Origin: Octopus bimaculoides
Taxonomy: Eukaryota
DNA: 64,000 nt
Assembly: GCF_001194135.2 (NCBI RefSeq)
Contig: NC_069002.1
Location: 8,797,990-8,861,989 of the forward strand
Direction of reading: 5' to 3'
Of this stretch, positions 13,468 to 63,320 are shown one piece after another. The position numbers and the translations under genes were made by a program. Each line of letters opens with the position of its first letter. The first letter of the stretch is position 1. The notes beneath the pieces are model-generated. The model saw nothing but the letters and a program-made list of their open reading frames with translations, was not told the DNA's origin and made no database searches.

Positions 13468-13740
13468 GTTGTTGTTGTTGGCACTCCGTCGCTTACGACG
13501 TCGAGGGTTCCAGTTGATCCGATCAACGGAACAGCCTGCTCGTGAAATTAACGTGCATGTGGCTGAGCACTCCATAGAAACGTGTACCCTACCCTTTACG
13601 TAGTTCTCGGGGATATTCAGCGTGACACAGTGTGACAAGGCTGACCCTTTGAATTACAGGTACAACAGAAACAGGAAGTAAAAGTGAGAGAAGGTTGCGG
13701 TGAAAGAGTACAGCAGGGTTCGCCACCATCCCCTGCATTG
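13468..13740 (-). mobile_element. SINE family D, 5'-truncated, followed by a B-tail fragment on + (about 13755-13890)
   Basis: Near-identical to 52630-52880 (ggcactccgtcgcttacgacgtcgagggttccagttgatccgatcaacgg...), with a (TTG)n tail. Confidence 0.9.
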
Positions 13741-16063: not shown

Positions 16064-16109
<46 letters not shown>

Positions 16110-16112
<3 letters not shown>

Positions 16113-16270
16113 TTTCATTTGTTTCAGTCATTTGACTGCGGCCACGCTGGAGCACCGCGTTTAGTCGAACAAATCGACCCCATGACTTATTCTTTGTAAG
16201 CCTATTACTTATTCTATCGGTCGCTTTTGCCGAACCGTTAAGGTAAGGGGACGTGAACACACCAACATCT
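16110..16270 (-). mobile_element. SINE B tail
   Basis: ttgtttcagtcatttgactgcggccacgctggagcaccg..tagtcga..tcgacccc..gacttattctttgtaagcct. Confidence 0.88.
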
Positions 16271-18527: not shown

Positions 18528-18574
<47 letters not shown>

Positions 18575-18577
<3 letters not shown>

Positions 18578-18790
18578 TGTGTCGGTTTGTCTCCCCAGCA
18601 TCGCTTGACAACCGATGCTGTCGTGTTTGCGTCCCCGTAACTTAGCGGTTCGGCAAAAGAGGACGATAGAATAAGTACAAGGCTTAGAAAGAATAAGCTC
18701 TAGGGTCAATTTGCTCGACTATAAAGGCGGTGCTCCAGCATGGCCACAGTCAAATGACTGAAACAAGTAAAAGAGAGTAAAAGAGAGTAT
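18575..18790 (+). mobile_element. SINE B tail after (TG)n and a gap
   Basis: catcgcttgacaaccgatgctg..cgtccccgtaacttagcggttcggcaaaagag..ggcggtgctccagcatggcc..gtcaaatgactgaaacaagtaaaagag. Confidence 0.9.
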
Positions 18791-24469: not shown

Positions 24470-24559
24470 AAACTGATAGGGAGATGAGAAGAGAAGAAGG
24501 TAAAAAAAAAGAAAGACAGGGAGATTTTGTGATTGTGTGAGAAATGTGAAAATTTCTTT

Positions 24560-24725
24560 TCTACTCTAGGCACAAGGCCCGAAATTTTGGGGAAAGTGGG
24601 CCCAGTCAATTAGATCGATCCCGGTACGCAACTGTTACTTAATTTTTCGACCCAGAAAAGATGAAAGGCAAAGTCGAAACCTCTATCTCGCGATCGAGAA
24701 TGCAACACCCAAACGACCACGCCAC
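24560..24725 (-). mobile_element. SINE family C fragment fused to a tRNA-head fragment
   Basis: ggcacaaggcc.gaaatttt..tcgacccagaaaagatgaaaggcaaagtcga then cgatcgagaatgcaacacc..accacgccacgc. Confidence 0.7.
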
Positions 24726-25539
24726 GCATTATTTGTTCGTGCAAGATTATATGACAATAATGGTTTAGCCCATTATAAAGCAGATTGTTATTGCAATAAT
24801 GGTTTAGTCCAAACTAGTATTTTACATTAGCTTGTATCAATGATAAAATCAATTTATAATTTAAATATCACTGATCTTCCAATAATAAAATCAAATTTTG
24901 TTATCCGGTGCAGCGAACAATTTGCAATATCAGTACATTTGTTATACATATTGACGATACCATAAATTGGTGTTATATTTTCTATATTTAATAATTTATG
25001 AAATTTTGATTTAAAAATACAGAAAAGATCAGATCAGATTTATTCAGAGGAAATCAATCAGCAACATTGATTATAGGTGATTCCTATAGACATTCTTTGT
25101 ATCTAATGAAATATTGAATGCAATTGGCTCATTCAATCATGCCTTCAATTCCATATTTGCTGTAATATCGATAAATGAAGGAACATTGTGTGTTTGGGGT
25201 GGAGTATGTCACGAAACAGGACCTTAAAATGTATTAACACTTTACTTTCAGAACCCATTTTGCGCCATATCTTCTTTTGTACCAGCAGTTTAATCATGTT
25301 ATAAATTAAGCATTTTATTTCCATTTCTTATTTTTTAACCATATTTTTAAAAATGAACTGGCACCCTGTCGTTTAGGATGACAAAATTTACTAACAGAAG
25401 TAACTTCATAAATTTCACTTCAATCCGCACACCTCGTTAAATTCGTCTACAAATTTCTTATTTACTTTTGCGACGTTTCGTGTTGTTTTGCTGTTGACGG
25501 AATAACTGGGGTTTTTTTTTTTTTTTGGTTACAAAATAA

Positions 25540-25772
25540 GCTACACAAAACGTGTTTTTAAATTACGTGTATTTACCGTATATACATATATAAGTTGAAA
25601 ACTTTCTTTTAACATTTCACGTAACGTCTATGTTCCACGCTGTCATGAGTTGGAGAGTTATTAGTGGAGAAACTTGGTATCTCAACTACTAGCAATTGAG
25701 ACTTGCGTAATCTAGACAGCAATTTTACATTTCATTATTCTCTTTAATCCGGGCAACGCCGAGTATTTCTGC

Positions 25773-25775
<3 letters not shown>
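25540..25775 (-). mobile_element. Non-autonomous Helitron-like repeat fragment
   Basis: Minus strand begins tagcagaaatactcggcgttgcccgga, like the ACTAGC..CCCGGCGTTGCCCGG termini I associate with microsatellite-linked invertebrate rolling-circle elements; shares ctccaactcatg with about 52480. Confidence 0.4.
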
Positions 25776-25820
<45 letters not shown>

Positions 25821-26611
25821 ATATCACGTTATCACATGATCGACCAAACTCTCGAATGTTGTTATACACCGCTGATCACAATGCACTTCGCATTGTTTTA
25901 GCTTTCGAATGATATCACCCTGCTGATTTCGCAGGTAGTCCAATGTAAATAAGCGTATATGTATGTATGTATGTACGTACGTACGTATGTATGTATTTTA
26001 GCGTTTATAAATTTCTTTTTATTACACCTTAATGCTTTTTAAATGATATAAGAATAAATATTCAACCGTAAATATATATTTACATTACTTAAACTGAACG
26101 TTTTTGTGTAGATGTATACAAAAGATGCGAGTGAATTAAAAGTTCGTTTTATTTTTATAGGTCTATATCGTTTATATCACTGTCCAAACACACACATACA
26201 TACACACACACACTCACACATGTACATGCACACACACACGGTTATATATATTTGTATACGTGTATGTGTGCATATGTATACATATGTGCGAGTGCGTCTT
26301 GCCGAAGTCGGGGTTTCTGTCTATCGAAGCTTAAATTGTTGATCAAAGACATTAATAGCAGTGTCAGATAAATATGCAAATTTATGTAAATATTATTGGC
26401 GACGAATCAAATATTAATTAAGCGGAGTCTTGAAAATTTATGAAATATAATAGAGATTGAAAAGTTTAATATAGAAATTTTATTTAATTCTGGAAGAGAA
26501 ATATGGCTGAAGGTAGATATAATAATTTTGTTATCTTCCTCATTAGATATGAGACTGCACTTTGTCAGTGTCATAGTGCGAGATATATTATATCTTTTTT
26601 ATAAGTGAAGG

Positions 26612-26935
26612 TGAGTGGCTTAGTCATTAGGGGCATTCGGCTCTCGATCGTTAGGTCATGAGTTCGTTTCTCGCCGGCGCTTTGTGTCTTTTGAGCAAGA
26701 CACTTTATTTCACGTTGTTCCAGTCCATTCAGCTAGCAAAAATGAATAGCAATTGTAATTCAGAGGGCCAGCCATGACACATTCTGTTTAATGCTGAATC
26801 TCCCTGAGAACTACGTTAAGGATACACGTGTCCGTGGAGTACACAGCCACTTGTACATTAATTTCATGATCAGGCTGTTCCGTTGATCAAATCTACTGAA
26901 ACACTCTTCATCGTAACCGACAGTGTACCAATTAT
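26612..26935 (+). mobile_element. tRNA-headed SINE (family D variant)
   Basis: gtgaaggtgagtggcttagt..tagg..gagttcgtttctc (A and B boxes), ttgagcaagacactttatttcacgttg, 3' part matching family D. Confidence 0.8.
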
Positions 26936-27209
26936 CTTTTATCCTTTACATCTTATTTGTTTCGATCACTGGACTGCGGCCATGCTGGGGCATAGCTCTG
27001 AGTCAAAGTTGACTTCACAATGTTAAGAACTCAGAGCGAATAAAACCGGAACGATTATTGCAAAGCAATCCATCGACCGCTCTGGTGCCTCCACCAATTG
27101 CTCATCTATTTGTCAGTTAAACGTTGCATTGTTCCTATCTTTTAATCTTTTATTTTTACTTGGTTAAGTGATGGACCTATGAAATATTGAAGTCCTAGAT
27201 ATATATCGT

Positions 27210-27540
27210 GAAGGCGCACGGCTCAGTGGGCTCGCAGTCATGAGGTTGTGAGTTCGATTCTCGGACCAGGATGCATGTTGTGTACTTGAGCAAGACACTT
27301 TATTTCACGTTGCTCCAGTTCACTCAGCTGTAGAAATGAGTTGTGACTTCACTGGTGCCAAGCTGTATCAACCTTTGTCTTTCCCTTGGATAACATCGGT
27401 GGCATGGAGAGGGGGGCTGGCATGCATGGGCGACTGTTGGTCTTCCATAAGAAACGTTGCCCGGACTTGTGTCTGGGAGGAGAACATTCTACGTGCAATC
27501 CCATGGTCATTCCTGACCGAAGGGGGTCTTTACCTCTTTG
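27210..27540 (+). mobile_element. tRNA-headed SINE with a different 3' tail
   Basis: gtgaaggcgcacggctcagtgg..gagttcgattctcggacc..ttgagcaagacactttatttcacgttgctccag, then a tail unrelated to family D. Confidence 0.75.
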
Positions 27541-27869
27541 CCCTTTTAAATATACTACTAAACCAAATATGGCCTGAATTTAAAACTTTATCTGTCCAAC
27601 TCAGCTGAATAAAAATAATAATATCATGAATATAGCTTGGAGAGGAATGTGTCCAACGAAACGTAACTTTAATCCGGATACACTTTGTGTAGACTAAACT
27701 TCCCATTTTGAAAGTCTGGTTCTATAGAATGCGAGATAACCATTTCATTCAATTGTCAGATTAGAAACTAAAACTTGGAAGTAAATCTCGTAGACGATTT
27801 ACTGAAACGAATTATCAGTCATTGTCCACTTCACTAATCAACAAACTGACAAATTCAACAGTTTAGTGG

Positions 27870-28190
27870 GGAGAGAGAGGGGGGAGAGAGAGGGAGAGAG
27901 AGAGAAGTGCTAGAAAGTGAGAGAGGGTCTGAGAGAAATAGAGAGAGAGAGAGAGAGTGGGGTATTTAATGGATTGTATTGTGAAGATGGCGGAAACTGT
28001 ATTTGTTTGAGTTTATCGAGAGCCAGCGATTCTTGAAAAAAAAAAAGAGAAAATAATAAAGAAACAAAACAAAAAAGAAAACCTACAAAAGAAAAATAAA
28101 CAAACAGAATTTCATATATGAATTGAATTCCGTCTCACGGTCTGCTGCCCTCTAAATCCGAACTAGTCATGTCTTTGTAGACAGTAAGAC
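27870..28190 (+). promoter_or_regulatory. Putative promoter and non-coding first exon (left copy)
   Basis: GA-rich tract, AAGATGGCG (YY1-type motif, typically just downstream of a TSS), A-rich leader, then ACA|GTAAGA donor at 28184; same elements in the paralog. Confidence 0.4.
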
Positions 28191-29952
28191 AGACTAACAG
28201 ACAGATAAGTAAATATAGGTCGACATACATAAATAGGTATTTCTATGTATCTTGTGATGAGTTTTGACAGCTGAATCGACTAGGGTAACGAGAAATAAAG
28301 TATTCTGCTCAAGAACCTGTAGCATCAAGGAAGCAAATTATCGGAAACCGGAACCGAAATTGTATCACTGTATTCCATTGCTTGGTATTTACCTCTGGTA
28401 CTACAGACACCGCCGCAACATGTGTTATCGCATTTAATCAGACTAGAATTATTAGATTTAGATATGTTATCATATATAATCAGACTAGAATAGTTTACAC
28501 TGGTTATAATATTCGATATTGATTTTTTTGTCCTTTAATGTAAGAGATACATACACATGTATCTAATATTATATGTATATATTTTATCAATTTTTCTGTA
28601 CGACTGATAATTCGCTTACCACTCGTGATGGTATTTTAATAATATCATTCTTATATATATATGAAGTCGTCAATTATGGAACACGTCTGTCACTACATAA
28701 ACCTGATGATTGCATAATGCATGAAAGTACTAGTTTATTTCAATATTGTAATACTGTAAAAATTGCAAATAAAAAAACCTGAAAATCAAAACTTAGAATT
28801 TCATAGGTTAATATATTTTTTCATTACACAATCATGCAAACTCGGATATATATATATATANNNNNNNNNNNNNNNNNNNNNNNNNNNNNNNNNNNNNNNN
28901 NNNNNNNNNNNNNNNNNNNNNNNNNNNNNNNNNNNNNNNNNNNNNNNNNNNNNNNNNNNNNNNNNNNNNNNNNNNNNNNNNNNNNNNNNNNNNNNNNNNN
29001 NNNNNNNNNNNNNNNNNNNNNNNNNNNNNNNNNNNNNNNNNNNNNNNNNNNNNNNNNNNNNNNNNNNNNNNNNNNNNNNNNNNNNNNNNNNNNNNNNNNN
29101 NNNNNNNNNNNNNNNNNNNNNNNNNNNNNNNNNNNNNNNNNNNNNNNNNNNNNNNNNNNNNNNNNNNNNNNNNNNNNNNNNNNNNNNNNNNNNNNNNNNN
29201 NNNNNNNNNNNNNNNNNNNNNNNNNNNNNNNNNNNNNNNNNNNNNNNNNNNNNNNNNNNNNNNNNNNNNNNNNNNNNNATATATATATATATACAAAATA
29301 CATCTCACCTCGGAGGCTAGTCTTTCGTATCAAGGAACAGGAGATAGCTACTTAATACTTAGTCGAAAAAAAGCGATAATGATACTTTTAAACCTCCCGA
29401 TAAGAGAGAAAGTAACGACTTTTGCCTTATCAGAGTGAAAGATATAATTTGTATCAGAAGGAGATGTCCAAAAATATCTGCAAGATGCCGCCTTCACACC
29501 TGACATGCTAAGTTCGTCTGAAAGGCGTGTGCATGTGTATGTGTTTACGCGTGTGCGTATGCATGTGATTGTGCACGTGTGTGTGTTTGTGTATATATGT
29601 TTGTGTATGCGAGTTTGAGTATGTGTTTCTGTGAGTATATTGTGTATGTGTGTGTATGTATGTATGTATGTGAGTACAGGTGTGTGTGTGCATGTGTATG
29701 TTTGGATCTGTGTGTGTGTGCGCGTGTGTTTTTGTGTATGCGTCTGTGTTCGTGCGTGTATGAATGTTCGTGCGCGTTTGTGTTTGTGTGTGTTTTTGTC
29801 AGTGAGCGTGTGTGTTTCTGTTAGTGTGTGCATTGTATGTGTGTGCACGTGTATGTTTGCTTGTGTGTGTGTGTGTGTGCGTGTGTGTGTGTGTGTGCGT
29901 GCGTATGCGTGCGTGCGTTGATGTGCGTGTATGCATGTATGTTTGTGCGTCC

Positions 29953-32589: not shown

Positions 32590-33580
32590 TGTGGCCGCTC
32601 AGATCGCCACCCCTGCTAGCTATGCAAATGACACAAAAGTTTCTCAGACGATACAAACTTCTGGAAATATTGCGGATCTACAACGGGAGGCGGACGCAAT
32701 ATACATTTGGGCAGAGGACAACAACATGCAGTTTAATGCAGGAAAATTCCAGGCCCTAAGTTACTAGCACAGAAAGCTAAACGACATGCAGACAAAATAC
32801 ACTGGCCCGAGAGGAATTGCAATCCCTGAATCAAAAACAGTGCGTGACCTGGGCATTGACATGAGCAATGATACATCTTTTCAAGTGCATATTACCAATT
32901 TGGTAACAAAATGCAGACGGCTGGATGGATAGATCCTCCGAACTTTCAAAACGCGAGAAAAGGAGATATTGATGATCCTTTGGGGGACATACGTCCTCAG
33001 CCGCTTGGACTACTGCTCCCAGCTATGATCACCACTTCGGAGCTCGAAGCAATCCAACGAAGCTACACTAAGAAAATCGTCTCCATGCAACGTATCAGTT
33101 ATTGGGGAAGACTGAAAGAATTAAAGCTCTTCTCCCGAGAACGAAGGCGGGGAAGATATGCTGTGATATACATCTGGAAAATCCTAGAAGGCCTTGTATC
33201 AAACTTTGGCATTGAAGATTACTCAAACTGCAGAATGCGGCGCCACTGCATAGTGCCAAAGATCCCAGCATTACCATCCAAATACAGAACCAGGTACTGT
33301 AACAGCTTGGGCTTCAAGGGCCCACAGTCTTTCAATATCCATCCAAAATGCCTGAGAGACTTGTATGGTGTGGATGTAGGTGTCTTCAAAACAAAACTGG
33401 ATCCCCCTCCTGTCAAAGGTTCCGGATGAGCCTACCTCAAGGTAGGAAACACAGATGAGGGCAGTGGCATCAAACTCCCTCATTGACCAAATGCCATATA
33501 TCAGAGGAGGTTTCAAATAATGGCGTAGCTCAGTCAACTGTGGTGCCCCAACACGACCGCAGCTTTGAACCTGAAACAGT
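32590..33580 (+). mobile_element. 5'-truncated CR1/L2/Crack-clade LINE: C-terminal reverse transcriptase, with stops and frameshifts
   Basis: SYANDTK (YADD-like), WAEDNNMQFNAGKFQ, VRDLGI, LSRLDYCSQL, ELEAIQRSYTKKI, SYWGRLKELKLFSRERRR, VFKTKLD. Confidence 0.92.
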
Positions 33581-37100: not shown

Positions 37101-37132
<32 letters not shown>

Positions 37133-37315
37133 TCCACACCATCACTTGACAACCGATGTTGATATGTTTACGTCCCCGTAATCTAGCTGTTCAGCAAAAG
37201 ACACCAATAGAATAAGTACTAAGCTTACAAAGAATATGTCCTGGGGGTCGATTAATTCGACTAAAGGCGGTGCTCCAGCATGGCCACGGTCAAATGACTG
37301 AAACAAGTAAAAAAT
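36960..37315 (+). mobile_element. Full-length composite SINE A/B with internal (TG)n
   Basis: Head 36960-37105, (TG)n, tail 37130-37315; mirrors 3398-3792. Confidence 0.9.
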
Positions 37316-51514: not shown

Positions 51515-52050
51515 CTTACTGTCTACAAAGACATGACTAGTTCGGATTTAGAGGGCAGCAGACCGTGAGACGGAATTCAATTCATATATGAAATTCTGTT
51601 TGTTTGTTTATTTATTATTTCTTTGCAGGTTTTTTCTTTTCTTTTTCCTTTTTTTTCCCCCCTTTATTTATTATTTTGTTTTTTCAAGAATCGCTGACTC
51701 TCGATAAACGCAAACAAACATAGTTTCCGCCATCTTNNNNNNNNNNNNNNNNNNNNNNNNNNNNNNNNNNNNNNNNNNNNNNNNNNNNNNNNNNNNNNNN
51801 NNNNNNNNNNNNNNNNNNNNNNNNNNNNNNNNNNNNNNNNNNNNNNNNNNNNNNNNNNNNNNNNNNNNNNNNNNNNNNNNNNNNNNNNNNNNNNNNNNNN
51901 NNNNNNNNNNNNNNNNNNNNNNNNNNNNNNNNNNNNNNNNNNNNNNNNNNNNNNNNNNNNNNNNNNNNNNNNNNNNNNNNNNNNNNNNNNNNNNNNNNNN
52001 NNNNNNNNNNNNNNNNNNNNNNNNNNNNNNNNNNNNNCCTCTCTCTCCAC
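51515..52050 (-). promoter_or_regulatory. Putative promoter and non-coding first exon (right copy), partly in a gap
   Basis: Minus strand: GA tract at about 52045, gap, AAGATGGCG at 51736-51728, donor ACA|GTAAGA at 51519. Confidence 0.4.
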
Positions 52051-52629: not shown

Positions 52630-53019
52630 TTGGTTGTTGGCACTCCGTCGCTTACGACGTCGAGGGTTCCAGTTGATCCGATCAACGGAACAGTCTGCTC
52701 GTGAAATTAACGTGCAAGTGGCTGAGCACTCCACAGACACGTGTAACCCTTAACGTAGTTCTCGGGGATATTCAGCGTGACACAGTGTGTGACAAGGCTG
52801 ACCGTTTGAATTACAGGCACAACAGAAACAGGAAGTAAGAGTGAGAGAAAGTTGTGGTGGAAGAGTACAGAAGGGTTCGCCACCATCCACTGCCGGAGCC
52901 TCGTAGAACTTTAGGTGTTTTCGCTCAATAAGCACTCACAACGCCCGGTCTGGGAATCGAAACCGCAATCCTATGACCGCGAATCCGCTGCCCTAACCAC
53001 TGGGCCATTGCGCCTCCAC
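52630..53019 (-). mobile_element. Full-length SINE family D with tRNA-Arg-like head
   Basis: Head gtggaggcgcaatggcccagtggttagggcagcggattcgcggtc..ggtttcgattcccag; 12-bp TSD tattctcYatat at 52618-52629 and 53020-53031. Confidence 0.95.
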
Positions 53020-53902: not shown

Positions 53903-55050
53903 CGGTGAGCTGGCAGGATTGTATCGTTAGCATGTCGAACAAAATGATTAGTGTTACGTTCTGAGTTCGAATCCCACCGACGTCAGCTTTGCCGTTCATC
54001 CCTTCGGGGTCGATAAAATAAGTACCAGTCAAGTACTTTGAATCGATGTAATCAACTGCCCTCCCCACCATCCACCCAAATTTCAGGCCTTACGTACACA
54101 GTAGAAACAAAATGCTGAGCGGTATTTCTCCCGGCGCTTTACGTTCTGAGTTCAAATCCCGCCAAAGTTAACTCGGCCTCTCATCCTTTCGGGGTCGATA
54201 AAGTAAGCACCAATCAAGTACTTGGATCGATCTAATCGATTAGACACCTCTATCCCAAATTTCAGACCTTACGCCTACAATGGAAACAAAATGTTGAGCG
54301 GTATTTCTTCTGTCTCTTAATGTTCCGAGTTCAAGACCCACCGAAGTCAATTTTGCATTTCATCCCTTCGGGGTCGATAAAATAAAGTACAAGCCACGTT
54401 CCTTCCCCTCAAAATTACTAACCTTGAACCCTGCAACAGACCGGCGTGCTATCGTTTCTGCCAGCTCGTCGCCTAAAAATAAACTGAATATCATCATAGC
54501 AAATTTTGGCACAAGGCCAGCAATTGCGGGGTAAGGGTAAGTCGCTTACATCGACCCCAGGCTGGTGATCAACTGGAACTTATTTATCGATCCCAAAAGG
54601 ATGAAAGGAAAACTCGACCTCGACCGAATTTGAACTCACAGCATGAAGACGGATGAAACGCCACTAAACATTTTGTCTAGCTTGCTCATGATTCTGCCAG
54701 CTCGCCTCTTTTATTATTGATGTCAAATGTTGGCACAAGGCCAACTGGTACTAAACTTTATTGACCCTTGAAAGATGAAAGGCCAATTCGACCTCCGGCG
54801 GGCTCACGATTCTGCCAGCTCACCTCTTTTATTACATATTTTATTGATTTCAAATGTTGGCACAAGGCTGGCAATTTTGCTGTTGAAATAAGCCAATTAC
54901 ACCCACCCCAGTGCTTAACTGGTACTAAATTTTATCGATCCCTGAGAGATGAAAGGCCAATTCTACCTCAGCCGAATTTAAACTCAGGACTTGAATACGG
55001 ACGAAAAGCCTCTAATTGTTTTGTCCGGCGTGCTGACGAATCTTCTAGCT
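53903..55050. mobile_element. Cluster of SINE family C copies: about three on + (53903-54420) then about three on - (54445-55050)
   Basis: Repeated ttctgagttc.aa.ccc..cga..tc / catcc.ttcggggtcgataaa on +, and their reverse complements after 54445. Confidence 0.9.
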
Positions 55051-55551: not shown

Positions 55552-57185
55552 CTCTCTCTCTCTCTCTTTCCATTTCTTTTTCCTTTATTCCCTTGTCAAT
55601 GAGCGTTGGCTTTTCCATTTTTCCCGAGCGTCAAACTAATACATCTGCTTGTTTTTCCCTTACCTTATCTCTGCCTATTGTTTCCTGTACATTTGAACCA
55701 TATGTGTGTATGTACGTGTGTGTGTGTGCTTCGTGTGTATATGTACGTGTGTGTGTGTGTGTGTGTGTGTAATGATTTACATACTTGTGTATTTGTTTAA
55801 TTTGATAATTTAAAAATAAACTTAATATATCAATTATATATCAATCCTAGAACGGTTGCCAGAGTGATACTGTGAATGAAATGTGCACTTACTGAACAGA
55901 GACTGCACAAAAAAAAATTGCAGTAAGGTTATTGGCCTCTTTCGTTATTTTCATATCATGTTCATCCGTCCGTTGCAGAAGAATAAATGTTAATATTCAA
56001 CAAAATTAAATATTGATGGTTACTTTCAACGAAATCGCTACTAAAACCAAGCGTACAGAGAAAACCAATCAACACAACCTATTTAACAATATAAACAAGA
56101 GATTTGAAAAGCATAAATTTCAGTACCTAAATTGTACTCAATTTCCACATCGTGTAGAAAGGAGTTGGTATCATATGGAATTACTATGAGGTATTTTTTT
56201 TATTCACCAAGCTTTTAACACAAATATTTGCGGAATATTTTTTTGCATAAGATAGCTTTATACTGAAACTGGTTTGAAGTCAATAGTTTTTAAATACTCA
56301 TTTACTATACACGTAATGAAAACTGCTTTAGATGCTGATGTACCACAAAAAGTATAAAGCCAATGTTGTTTTACGTCAAAAGAATCTAGAACCTTCGAGA
56401 GAACATAAAATAATTCGTTTTTAACAGAGGGACTAGAAGTAGATTAGGTTATAAATATTCCTTTGTACTATAGGCACAAGGCCTCAAATTTGGGGGGCGG
56501 GGGTTCTATTACGAAGTTCTTAAAATTTCTAGTTGGTGGTAATCGATTGTGTATAGCACTATTTCATTCTTTTTGGAAATCTTCAGCATGAGTTAACCTG
56601 TAAATTATTAATTCGGTATATTACGAATAGAGACATTTCGTTAAATTAAATTAAATAAATATTAAAGATGAAATTAATTACTATCCGGAAGAAATAGTGA
56701 ATTTATGTAAGAAGTGGGTGCATAATATGATGTTTGTGTACTCATTTTGCTTGGTGTTTAGTGTCCGAATTAAACAAGATTTTAGGCATTGTGCCATAAC
56801 AGAAACATTCCAACAGACAATGATGATTTATCGACATCACACGAAATATGGAATCGGTGGCATGATTGAGTGAATGAACCAGTTATATTTAATATTTTAC
56901 TAAAAGCAAAGAATGTCTGCAGAAATCATACATAATCAATGTTGATGATTGATTTCATTAGAATTAATCTAATGTGATTTCTTCTTTTATTTTTATGCTA
57001 AAATTTCATAAATTATTAACTCTTGATAATATGACACCAATTTATATGTGTAACAAATGTGCTAACATAGCAAATTGTTCGCTACACCGGATATCAGAGA
57101 TTGGTTTTATTATTGGAATACCAGTGATATTTAGATTATAAATTGATTTTATTATTGATACAAGTTAATATAAAATACTGGTTTG

Positions 57186-57700
57186 GACTGAACCATTATT
57201 GCAACATAATATTTCACTACATAATGGCCTAAACCATCATTGTAATGGAATAATTCACTATGTAACGGACTAAACTACTATCGTAATGTAAATAATTGCC
57301 CATATAATGGACTGAACCATTATTGTCATGTACGAGTTCACTATATAATGGACTGAACTATTACTGTCACGTAAGAGTACACTAGTACACTAGTGAAGGC
57401 GCGTGGCCTAGTGGTTAGGCTTTTGTACTCACGATCGCTAGATCGTGGGTTCGATTCCCTGATTAGCCGGCACGTTATGTCCTTGAGCAAAACACTCCAT
57501 TTCACGTTGCTCCCCCTTTCGATCACCGGGGAAAGTTGGCCTGCTCGTCTAGCCAACAGGGTGGTATCATCTGAAGGCTAAACCGATACAAAAACGCATT
57601 GTGACCAACATATGATAGCCCGGTCGGTCACGTGATCACCTAAATAGTACACTATACAACCTACTAAACCATTATTATAATGCAATAGTTGGCTATATAA
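57186..57700 (+). repeat. About 41-bp minisatellite (6-7 degenerate units) interrupted by a SINE
   Basis: Units begin ggactgaaccattattg, ggcctaaaccatcattg, ggactaaactactatcg, ggactgaaccattattg, ggactgaactattactg; resumes after 57654. Confidence 0.85.
57393..57644 (+). mobile_element. tRNA-headed SINE with 10-bp TSD
   Basis: gtgaaggcgcgtggcctagtggttagg..gggttcgattccc; TSD tagtacacta at 57383-57392 and 57645-57654. Confidence 0.93.
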
Positions 57701-58064
57701 TCGACTAAACAGCTTAGTTGATGTTACAGTCAACTAAATTTATTCAATCATAATCAATTGATATTCATTTCCATGTTCCACACCCTATTAATCTATTTGT
57801 ATGTATAATATATATGTATGTATGTGTCTATTTGTGAATGCATGTGTATGTGTCAATTTGTGTCTGTATGTGTATTTGTGTATAATAGGTGAAATATCAC
57901 AAATGGAACGAAAGAAACAAGAGACGGGCAGATGGACAACGTGAGAGGTTACAACAGGTAGAGAAATATTCGAAATCAGTGCACAAAATGTAAATACATA
58001 CACAACACACACACACACACACACACACATACATACATACGTACATACATACATACATACATAA

Positions 58065-59340: not shown

Positions 59341-59716
59341 GTTGTTGTTGTTGTCACTCCGTCGCTTATGACGTCGAGGGTTCCAGTTGATCCGATCAAC
59401 GGAAATTAACGTGCAAGCGGCTGAGCACTCCACAGACACGTGTACGCTTAATGTAGTTCTCGGGGATATTCAGCGTGACACAGTGTGACAAGTCTGGTCC
59501 CTTTGAATTACAGGCACAACAGAAACAGGAAGTAAGAGTGAGAGAAAGTTGTGGTGAGAGAGTACAGCAGGGTTCGCCACCATCCCCTGCCGGAGCCTCG
59601 TGGAGCTTTAGGTGTTTTCGCTCAATAAACACTCACAACGTCCGGTCTGGGAATCGAAACGGCGATCCTATGACCGCGAGTCCGCTGCCCTAACCACTGG
59701 GCCACTGCGCCTCCAC
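59341..59716 (-). mobile_element. Full-length SINE family D
   Basis: Near-identical to 52630-53019 with a short internal deletion; 11-bp TSD caagYataatc at 59330-59340 and 59717-59727. Confidence 0.95.
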
Positions 59717-60935: not shown

Positions 60936-61904
60936 CAGGCACTGAATTTTTATATCGCGACTCTCGAGTTCCACGCCACTGCATTCTTCAAGCGTAAATT
61001 GTTCAAGTGTTCCCATGTTTCTAACTTGGTGTTGTTGATATATTCCTGTTTGTTGGCGTGGTTGGGGTTTCATATTTATATTTATTCGTTTGCATTTTCC
61101 TTTTGCTAAATGCCAGTGATTTTCTGCTTCGGCTATTTTATGATGAACGGCCTGTTTTTAAGACGCTTATGAAGTTGTTGATCTACTTCAGGCTGTTCTT
61201 TTGTTAAGTTTGTTTCGGTATGTTTTCGGGGCACCTTTAATGGTATTGTGTTTGCAAATTCTGTCAGGAGATTTTTGAAAATGGTTATAAAACCAATTAA
61301 GGATAAGGATTGTTCGGTTATAAAAGATATTCCATGGCTGAGTGGCTCATGATTTCTGTGATTTTCGGAAAAGTATCCTATTTATTTCAATGGGAATGTG
61401 GTTTTAGGGTGTGTTTAGAATGTATGTATGCGTGGTTATATATCTGTGTGTATGTGTGTGTGCGCGTGAGTGTGCACCTGCTTGTACGATGTGCACACGT
61501 AGTGTGTGTCTGAGAGTGCGTGTGTGAGTGTGCACGCGTACCTGCATGCATGTGCACACCTGTCTGTGCGCGTGTATGCGTGTGTATGCGTGTGTGTGCG
61601 CGCTCGCTCGCACGTGTGTGTGTATACGTGTGAGTGTGATATGTATATAAAGAATTTTGTTTGTAAAAATCCATTGAAGATCATGTGAAATTAAATTCTT
61701 AGGTTCCCAAGTGTGAATATGTGTGCAAGTGTTCAAACCTGAGTACGTGCGTTCGTGTGTGCAACGTAGCCGAGTCTTTATGTATGTATGCGTATGTGTG
61801 TGTGTGTGTGTGTGTGTGTATTTGTGTGCGTGTACGTGTGTGTGTATGGATGTGTTCGTGTGTGTGTGGCATGTATGGAGACAGAGCCAATTCTTTAAAT
61901 ATCA

Positions 61905-62520
61905 GCTTCAAATTTTGACACACGGCCAGTAAATTAGAGGGGAGGGGTAAGTCATTTACATCGACCCTAGTACTCAAATTGTGCTTGTTTTATCGACCCC
62001 GAAAGGATATGAGACAAAGTCGGCCGCGATGGAATTTGAACTCAGAATGTAAGGACGGAATAAATGCTGTTAAGGATTTAGCCTGGTTTCCTAACGATTC
62101 TACTGGCTCGTCGCCCTAACAATTGATTATAATATTAAATAACGTGGTCATTTATTAGTTATGTTGTTCGGAGTTCAGATTCCGCTGAGGTCGACGTTGT
62201 CATTTGTTTTACTTTCGTGGGATGGAGGTCGAAAAAATAAGTAGCTGTTGAACAATGGATTCCATGTTATTAACTATCCCCTCCCCTCAAATTTCAGGTT
62301 TTGTGCTTATAGCAGAAAAAATTATAACTGTTATTATGTTCTGAGTTCGAATTCCGCCAAGTAGAATTTTGTCTTTCATCTTTTCGGGGTCGATCCTGAA
62401 ATGATGAAAGGCAAAGTCGACCTCGGTGTAATTTGAACTCAGAACGTAAAGACAGACCAAAAAAACGCTAAGCATTTTATCCGACGTGCAAACGTTTCTG
62501 CCAGCTCGTCGCCTTAGCCA
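61905..62520. mobile_element. SINE family C copies in alternating orientation, including a head-to-head fusion at 62338-62445
   Basis: Minus copy 61905-62120, plus fragment 62170-62320, fused inverted pair centred on tcga at 62390-62393. Confidence 0.85.
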
Positions 62521-62969: not shown

Positions 62970-63320
62970 CGATATACTTAGCGCTTCGGCAAAAAGAGAC
63001 CGATAGAATAGTACTACGCTTATGAAAAATAAGTCCTGGGTCGATTTCTACGTCCAAAGGCGGAGCTCCAGCATGGCCGCAGTCAAATGACTGAAACAAG
63101 TAAAAGAATAAAAGAATATATATATATATAAGGCATTTCGTCTGCCTTAACATTCTGAGTTCAAATTCTACGGAGGTCGATTCTACGGAGGTCAAATTCT
63201 ACGGAGGTCGATCCCTTTCGGGATCGATAAAATCAGTACCAGTTGTACATTGGTGTCGATGTAATCGACTTACCCCCTCTTCCGAAATTGCTGGCCTTGT
63301 GCCAAAATTTGAAAGCAATA
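62970..63320 (+). mobile_element. SINE B tail (62970-63125) followed by a family C copy with an internal 15-bp triplication
   Basis: gctccagcatggccgcagtcaaatgactgaaacaagtaaaag; attctacggaggtc three times at about 63165-63210. Confidence 0.88.

What the first reader, a model, noticed from the sequence alone, without database searches (positions are those of the whole stretch)
28097..28262. 160-bp core almost identical between paralogs whose flanks are clearly diverged
Seen: from cagaatttcatatatgaattgaattccg to gtgatgagttt there is one mismatch against the reverse complement of 51438-51598, while 27630-27865 differs at many positions. The core holds a TTCATATATGAA palindrome, small hairpins (tgtct-ttgt-agaca; atacata...tatgtat) and a GTAAGA donor. 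Inference: strong purifying selection or local gene conversion between the inverted arms. On the opposite strand the same stretch reads as AG|..ATG ACT AGT TCG GAT TTA GAG GGC AGC AGA CC|GTGAGA, with pyrimidine-rich acceptors conserved in both copies. Splicing to the TTTCAAG acceptor gives 16-aa peptides MTSSDLEGSRPIA(D/G)SR, so strand and role are unresolved.
Basis: partly seen in the sequence, partly recalled or inferred. Interest (0 to 1): 0.7.

Follow-up and report, generated by a model that had tools for sequence, protein, structure and literature searches.

The report
Near-identical patch in old inverted duplication
Two old, non-coding inverted copies of a few kilobases are about 85% alike except for one 165-170 bp patch that is almost identical, most likely because one copy recently overwrote the other there (gene conversion), not because a gene or RNA is hidden in it.

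Summary
Window 28102-28264 matches the reverse complement of 51439-51601 with 1 mismatch in 163 bp (2 in 173 from 28092). The other 1033 aligned sites of the same inverted duplication differ at 15.8% (binomial P = 4e-12; no permutation of 20,000 gave so long a run). The duplication is larger than reported: five collinear blocks, 24751-28264 against 57246-51439. None is coding. Outside the patch the mismatches are evenly spread. The patch lies at the inner edge of the homology, between an indel-rich A-rich tract and the point where homology stops.

Nothing supports a functional element. There is no Rfam match and no unusual RNA stability on either strand. There are no protein or ORF records, and no inverted ends or target duplication. 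The exon-like pattern (ATG, 11 codons, GTGAGA) occurs in 15% of background windows, and both differences that touch the proposed peptides change an amino acid. Half of the patch is degenerate (GACA)n/(ATAC)n-like sequence.

My best explanation is a recent interlocus gene-conversion tract confined between two heterology barriers (about 0.45). Rivals are a constrained small exon or promoter, a conserved terminal module of a mobile element, and an assembly artefact. No genome of this or a related species could be searched, so copy number and orthology are untested. Interest is low.

The parts
28092..28264 (.). Near-identical patch, copy A (163-bp core 28102-28264 plus 10 bp of AAAC repeat)
   Evidence: 1 mismatch in 163 bp and 2 in 173 bp against copy B. 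Only two copies in the window.
51439..51611 (.). Near-identical patch, copy B, in inverted orientation
   Evidence: Same alignment. It lies 136 bp from the N run 51737-52037 but inside contiguous sequence with unique flanks.
28041..28091 (.). A-rich low-complexity tract that bounds the patch on the outer side (copy B 51612-51679, 17 bp longer)
   Evidence: 15/51 mismatches plus 17 gap columns. TRF reports degenerate A-rich periods.
27984..28040 (.). 57-bp homologous block (copy B 51680-51736) holding AAGATGGCGGAAAC
   Evidence: 4/57 mismatches, 93%.
27613..27865 (.). Homologous block (copy B 52313-52066), followed by (GA)n in A and an N run in B
   Evidence: 87.9% identity, stops in all frames.
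26754..26931 (.). SINE-like 3' module at a collinear position in both arms (copy B 52815-52637)
   Evidence: 81.5% identity. Further copies at 13474-13736, 59347-59716 and 38749-38943.
26326..26411 (.). Homologous block (copy B 53377-53290)
   Evidence: 88.4% identity.
24751..25176 (.). Outermost homologous block (copy B 57246-56826), AT-rich and non-coding
   Evidence: 82.9% identity, 7-18 stops per frame.
28265..28316 (-). 3'-truncated SINE fragment that abuts the end of homology in copy A
   Evidence: About 75% identity over 55 nt to the reverse complement of the SINE at 27282-27337.
51200..51438 (-). Sequence just beyond the end of homology in copy B; weakly resembles a tRNA-derived SINE head
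   Evidence: Only weak local alignments to the window's SINE heads. No homology to copy A's outer flank.

Best explanation
The patch is a recent interlocus (non-allelic) gene-conversion tract between the two arms of an old, non-coding inverted duplication (arms 24751-28264 and 57246-51439, spacer about 23 kb). The arms have drifted apart to about 16% difference (about 0.18 substitutions per site after Jukes-Cantor correction). In one 165-173 bp segment, one arm was recently used as the template to repair or overwrite the other, which reset the difference to 1-2 sites. The tract fills exactly the stretch of uninterrupted homology between two barriers that a heteroduplex cannot cross: the indel-rich A-rich tract on one side and the end of homology on the other. 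Shown: the identity step, its significance, the even divergence elsewhere, and the lack of coding or RNA signals. Inferred: the conversion event itself, its recency (roughly 3-7% of the age of the duplication), and the role of the barriers.
For: An unexpectedly long run of identity in a paralogue alignment is the standard signature of conversion; a paper cited in PMC4467073 used it that way. Here the run is 167 sites against a permutation maximum of 108, with binomial P = 4e-12. Outside the patch the mismatches are homogeneous (chi-square p = 0.08; longest-run p = 0.74). So there is one discrete event on a uniform background, not graded constraint. The arms are close together and inverted, an arrangement known to permit conversion (established knowledge). 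There is no Rfam hit at gathering score, nor any non-chance hit at E<=10, on either copy. Fold z-scores are +0.34 and -0.56. No protein or ORF is on record. No other conserved exon exists in the arms. Positions 77-150 of the core are degenerate (GACA)n/(ATAC)n-like sequence, which should mutate fast, yet only one site there differs between the copies. All four CpG sites are kept.
Against: The tract abuts the end of homology, so one side of the exchange had no homologous flank. That is awkward for the usual repair models and makes 170 bp a short substrate. Nothing dates the event independently. With only two sequences and no outgroup, conversion cannot be told apart from very strong constraint. 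The position at the edge is explained more naturally by a mobile-element terminus.
Confidence: 0.45

Rival explanations
1. Functional constraint. The core is a small functional unit kept in both copies by selection. It could be a core promoter with a tiny first exon on the minus strand of arm A and the plus strand of arm B (ATG at 28170, donor GTGAGA at 28138, T-rich intron, acceptor TTCAAG near 28037). That would encode an 11-31 aa peptide or start a non-coding transcript, in two head-to-head copies.
For: ATG, 11 open codons, GTGAGA, a pyrimidine tract and an AG acceptor are present in both copies. A 31-aa ATG ORF is kept in both. Homology begins abruptly at what would be the upstream edge of the unit.
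Against: The exon-like pattern occurs in 15% of background windows. The one core mismatch changes Tyr to Cys in the 31-aa ORF. The difference in the proposed second exon changes Gly to Asp. No further conserved exon exists in the arms. No protein in the database shares any frame. At least about 80% of sites would have to be constrained, including 47 nt of proposed intron and microsatellite-like sequence.
Confidence: 0.2
2. Mobile-element module. The arms are two copies of a long non-autonomous element or composite repeat from different subfamilies. Its terminal 165 bp are kept nearly identical because the transposition machinery recognises them. Alternatively the core is a separate young repeat.
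For: This explains in one step why the best-conserved stretch coincides with a sharp end of homology. The window is dense with SINEs and other repeats, and SINE fragments abut the boundary, clearly in A and weakly in B.
Against: There is no inverted partner of the terminal sequence within the window and no inverted ends inside the core. By inspection there is no target-site duplication and no TG..CA or Helitron-type end. There are only two copies in 64 kb, 23 kb apart and inverted, with a SINE module at a collinear internal position. That looks like a local segmental duplication. There are no transposase or RT remnants in the arms.
Confidence: 0.2
3. Assembly or gap-closing artefact. In this gappy short-read-type draft, reads from one arm were used to build about 165 bp of the other.
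For: The window has 23 runs of N. Copy B of the core lies 136 bp from an N run. The patch is about one short-read length.
Against: Both cores sit inside contiguous sequence with unique, arm-specific flanks on both sides. One real difference (28214) is kept between them. A true 15%-diverged copy would assemble without difficulty.
Confidence: 0.1

Closest known systems
Interlocus gene-conversion tracts in segmental duplications and inverted repeats (for example the inverted RHD/RHCE pair and other human duplicons surveyed in PMC4467073; palindrome arms of sex chromosomes, from general knowledge)
   Same: Paralogous DNA in inverted orientation a few tens of kb apart. A short patch (10^2-10^3 bp) of near identity sits in a more diverged background and is detected as a longer-than-expected run of identity.
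   Different: Here the background is very diverged (about 16%), well beyond the identity at which conversion is usually efficient. The tract also sits at the very edge of the homology. No outgroup or population data confirm the exchange.
Ultraconserved or otherwise constrained non-coding elements and short first exons retained in duplicates
   Same: A sharply bounded block far more conserved than its surroundings, with no need for an ORF.
   Different: Such elements are defined by conservation between species, which could not be tested. This block is half microsatellite-like, has no structure signal and shows no partner exons.
Conserved termini of non-autonomous DNA transposons, Helitrons and MITEs
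   Same: High identity confined to an end, with a diverged interior and an abrupt loss of homology at the terminus.
   Different: No inverted ends, no target-site duplication, no characteristic terminal motifs, and no further copies in the window.

Membership tests
Interlocus gene-conversion tract | Two paralogous sequences with measurable background divergence | tested here: met
   Five collinear inverted blocks with 163/1033 mismatches outside the patch.
Interlocus gene-conversion tract | A run of identity significantly longer than the background predicts (Sawyer/GENECONV-type test) | tested here: met
   Run of 167 sites with at most 1 mismatch, against a maximum of 108 in 20,000 permutations; binomial P = 4e-12. 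The rest is homogeneous.
Interlocus gene-conversion tract | Tree conflict with orthologues: paralogues within the species group together in the tract but by locus in the flanks | not testable with these tools
   No eukaryotic genome collection could be searched. Metagenome scans found nothing.
Interlocus gene-conversion tract | Homologous flanks on both sides of the tract | tested here: not met
   Homology ends at 28264/51439 and does not resume within 3.7-4.4 kb. The other side is an indel-rich A-tract.
MITE / DNA transposon | Terminal inverted repeats | tested here: not met
   No inverted repeat joins the ends of the core. There is no partner for the terminal 14-30 nt in the window.
MITE / DNA transposon | Target-site duplication flanking each copy | tested here: not met
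   The flanks are ...AAACAAA / TGACAGC in A and ...AAACAAA / GCTTGAT in B, with no direct repeat (read).
MITE / DNA transposon | Many dispersed copies in the genome | not testable with these tools
   Only two copies in the 64-kb window. The genome is not available.
Structured non-coding RNA (Rfam family, miRNA precursor, snoRNA, snRNA) | Match to a curated covariance model | tested here: not met
   No hit at gathering score in the window. At E<=10 only chance hits appear: PART1_3 on (GA)n at 20 bits against 40, and mir-214 at 16 bits against 66.7.
Structured non-coding RNA (Rfam family, miRNA precursor, snoRNA, snRNA) | Fold more stable than shuffled sequence, or a long hairpin | tested here: not met
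   z = +0.34 on the plus strand and -0.56 on the minus strand. The longest stems are 9-11 bp.
Protein-coding first exon of paralogous genes | ORF with start codon and splice donor beyond what chance gives | tested here: inconclusive
   Present in both copies, but the same pattern occurs in 15% of background windows.
Protein-coding first exon of paralogous genes | Further conserved coding exons, and differences biased to synonymous sites | tested here: not met
   All homologous blocks have stops in every frame. Both differences that touch the proposed peptides are non-synonymous.
Protein-coding first exon of paralogous genes | Homologous proteins or called genes elsewhere | tested here: not met
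   No hit for any frame of the core. No called gene has these products. The peptides are very short, so this test is weak.

The most novel reading that the evidence does not exclude
The 165-bp unit is a real, lineage-specific functional element kept identical in two head-to-head copies. It could be a minimal promoter with a micro-exon for a 16-31 aa hydrophobic peptide or a non-coding transcript. Or, if both arms are transcribed together, the two cores could form a perfect 163-bp double-stranded stem that yields small RNAs. In either case selection, helped by conversion, holds the two copies together while the rest of the duplication decays.
Probability: 0.12. Interest if true: 0.45.

Novelty: already known. 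Interest (0 to 1): 0.2.

Why it matters
If it is a conversion tract, it is an ordinary example of concerted evolution persisting in a last island of a decaying inverted duplication. That is useful as an annotation caveat, because high local identity here does not mark a gene or an RNA. It also marks a possible substrate for inversion of the 23-kb spacer. It would matter more only if transcript or cross-species data showed that the unit is expressed and conserved, which nothing here suggests.

Tried and rejected
- **Rfam:** the whole window at gathering score and both copies at E<=10 gave only chance hits.
- **tRNA scan:** none found.
- **RNA folding:** both strands fold no better than shuffles.
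- **Bacterial promoter/terminator scan:** nothing, and not an appropriate test here.
- **Related sequences elsewhere:** two exact-pattern scans of metagenome contigs gave 0. One protein search with all reading frames of the core joined end to end gave 0. Five exact-product look-ups of ORFs in or near the core and of the 172-aa ORF gave nothing on record. No eukaryotic genome collection is on hand, so copy number and orthology remain untested.
- **Pfam:** six of the less repetitive ORFs gave nothing usable.
- **Resumption of homology:** none found beyond either boundary. None found for a missing SINE half either.
- **Inverted ends:** none.
- **Third, diverged copy:** nhmmer and sensitive blastn found only microsatellite-like noise.
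- **Identity gradient toward the inner edge:** considered and rejected as not significant (Spearman p = 0.10).
- **Site-specific retroelement target and Pol III gene readings:** considered and rejected, because no RNA-gene match exists and the T-runs differ between copies.

Full report
**Context.** The window is a gappy eukaryote-type draft with 23 runs of N and 30-40% G+C. It is full of microsatellites and tRNA-derived SINE-like repeats. ORFs of 90 aa or more are almost all translations of simple repeats or of N runs. No tRNA gene and no Rfam family at gathering score is present. I could not establish the organism. From memory, the SINE at 24559-24745 resembles those of octopus genomes; that is unverified.

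I read both regions directly and aligned them globally.
- Window 28102-28264 and the reverse complement of 51601-51439 differ at one position in 163 (28214, T against C).
- Extending into the AAAC repeat to 28092 gives 2 differences in 173.
- The other aligned sites of the arms differ at 163 of 1033 positions (15.8%).
- The chance of at most one mismatch in the patch at that rate is 4e-12. Using only the nearest flanks (11.2%) it is 3e-8.
- The longest stretch with at most one mismatch is 167 sites. In 20,000 permutations of the mismatches the mean was 51 and the maximum 108.

**The duplication is larger than the finding.** Five collinear inverted blocks link 24751-28264 to 57246-51439, with the following identities:

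| Arm A | Arm B | Identity |
|---|---|---|
| 24751-25176 | 57246-56826 | 82.9% |
| 26326-26411 | 53377-53290 | 88.4% |
| 26754-26931 (SINE-like module, further copies in the window) | 52815-52637 | 81.5% |
| 27613-27865 | 52313-52066 | 87.9% |
| 27984-28040 | 51736-51680 | 93.0% |

After these comes an A-rich, indel-rich tract, and then the patch.
- Every block has stop codons in all six frames in both arms. The arms are therefore duplicated non-coding DNA, not gene paralogues.
- Outside the patch the mismatches are evenly spread. The heterogeneity chi-square gives p = 0.08. The longest run is typical of permutations (p = 0.74). The apparent rise of identity toward the inner edge is not significant (Spearman p = 0.10).
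- The patch is therefore a single discrete outlier on a uniform background.

**Position.** The patch lies at the inner edge of the arms.
- Homology stops at 28264 and 51439. A sensitive search out to 32000 and 47000 found no resumption.
- In arm A the next bases are a 3'-truncated SINE fragment in reverse orientation.
- In arm B the next bases only weakly resemble a SINE head.
- On the other side the patch ends at an A-rich tract that differs between the arms by 17 bp of indels and many substitutions.

**Tests for a functional element.**
- *RNA.* No Rfam hit other than chance appeared at E<=10 on either copy (PART1_3 on the (GA)n run; mir-214 at 16 bits against a threshold of 66.7). Neither strand folds better than shuffled sequence (z = +0.34 and -0.56), and the stems are 9-11 bp.
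- *Coding.* The minus-strand pattern of ATG, 11 codons and GTGAGA is real and is kept in both copies. A 31-aa ORF also starts at an upstream ATG. However, ATG with at least 10 open codons running into a GTRAG occurs in 15% of background 173-nt windows of this same sequence.
- *The differences.* The single difference in the core changes Tyr to Cys in the 31-aa ORF. The difference in the proposed second exon changes Gly to Asp.
- *External records.* No protein in the large database shares any frame of the core. No gene has been called with these products.
- *Composition.* Positions 77-150 of the core are degenerate (GACA)n/(ATAC)n-like sequence that weakly matches the window's microsatellites. 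That is an unlikely substrate for a constrained element, and it is sequence that normally changes fast.

**Tests for a mobile element.**
- The core has no inverted ends.
- Its terminal 14-30 nt have no partner elsewhere in the window.
- No target-site duplication flanks either copy (read).
- No third copy, even a diverged one, is in the window.
- Copy number in the rest of the genome could not be tested. Two metagenome scans found nothing, and no eukaryotic genome collection is available.

**Interpretation.**
- About 26 differences are expected in 163 neutral sites at the background rate, and one is seen. For selection alone, roughly 80% or more of the positions would have to be constrained (Poisson upper bound 4.7 of 25.7; inference). 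That set would include 47 nt of the proposed intron and the microsatellite-like half. This exceeds typical coding exons, and no structural or coding signal supports it.
- A recent copy-over of one arm by the other explains the same numbers without requiring any function. It matches the accepted signature of interlocus gene conversion, namely longer-than-expected runs of identity between paralogues (as summarised in PMC4467073).
- The tract fills exactly the uninterrupted homology between two heterology barriers. This is what one expects if heteroduplex or repair synthesis cannot pass the indel-rich A-tract or the end of homology (inference).
- The weak point is that one side of the tract has no homologous flank. 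A break just outside arm A, repaired from arm B and then end-joined, would account both for this and for the truncated SINE at the junction. That is speculation.
- The coincidence of the best-conserved stretch with a sharp end of homology is explained more economically by a conserved terminus of a mobile element. I therefore keep that as a serious rival, alongside a constrained small exon or promoter and an assembly artefact.

**Verdict.** This is a known kind of phenomenon in non-coding, repeat-rich DNA, and interest is low. Whole-genome copy number and a sister-species comparison would settle it.

Noticed in passing
window 27205-27550; 26613-26931; 52633-53019; 59347-59716; 13474-13736; 38749-38943: Several tRNA-derived SINE-like copies of at least two head types share a 3' module. 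The copy at 52633-52893 is 93% identical to 13474-13736 but only about 81% identical to the collinear copy in the other arm (26754-26931). These may be independent insertions at matching sites, or conversion by other SINE copies.
   Followed up: partly
window 24748-24810 and 57184-57384 (also 57640-57720): A 41-bp minisatellite (unit like CAATAATGGTTTAGTCCATTATA...) marks the outer ends of both arms. It has 4.6 copies in arm B, interrupted by a SINE at about 57385-57560, and about 1.5 copies in arm A.
   Followed up: partly
window 53954-54385: A 179-bp unit repeated 2.4 times in tandem (78% matches) looks like a SINE-derived tandem array. Related copies lie at 46859-47416, 54487-55050, 61898-62510 and 1615-1778.
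   Followed up: no
window 32911-33429 (+): This 172-aa ORF is the only long ORF that is not low-complexity. From memory it resembles the C-terminal tail of non-LTR retrotransposon ORF2 proteins. It has no Pfam hit and no exact record.
   Followed up: partly
window 40380-40538 (+), running into the N run at 40540: The ORF fragment ...PPQFWEEGIFKLKERWRRIVQQNGSYLV resembles, from memory, the C-terminus of mariner-type transposases. Its only Pfam hit is a weak, irrelevant one.
   Followed up: partly
window 27985-27998 and 51735-51722: AAGATGGCGGAAAC is kept in both arms next to a long (GA)n run. The AAGATGGCGG part matches the YY1/Pho-type motif known from core promoters (from memory). There is a single occurrence per arm, so no weight was put on it.
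   Followed up: no
window 18562-18772, 37106-37312, 41353-41473, 47648-47890, 62976-63130, 16088-16242: A dispersed repeat family of about 200 bp sits next to (CA)n/(GT)n runs, at 80-85% identity between copies.
   Followed up: no
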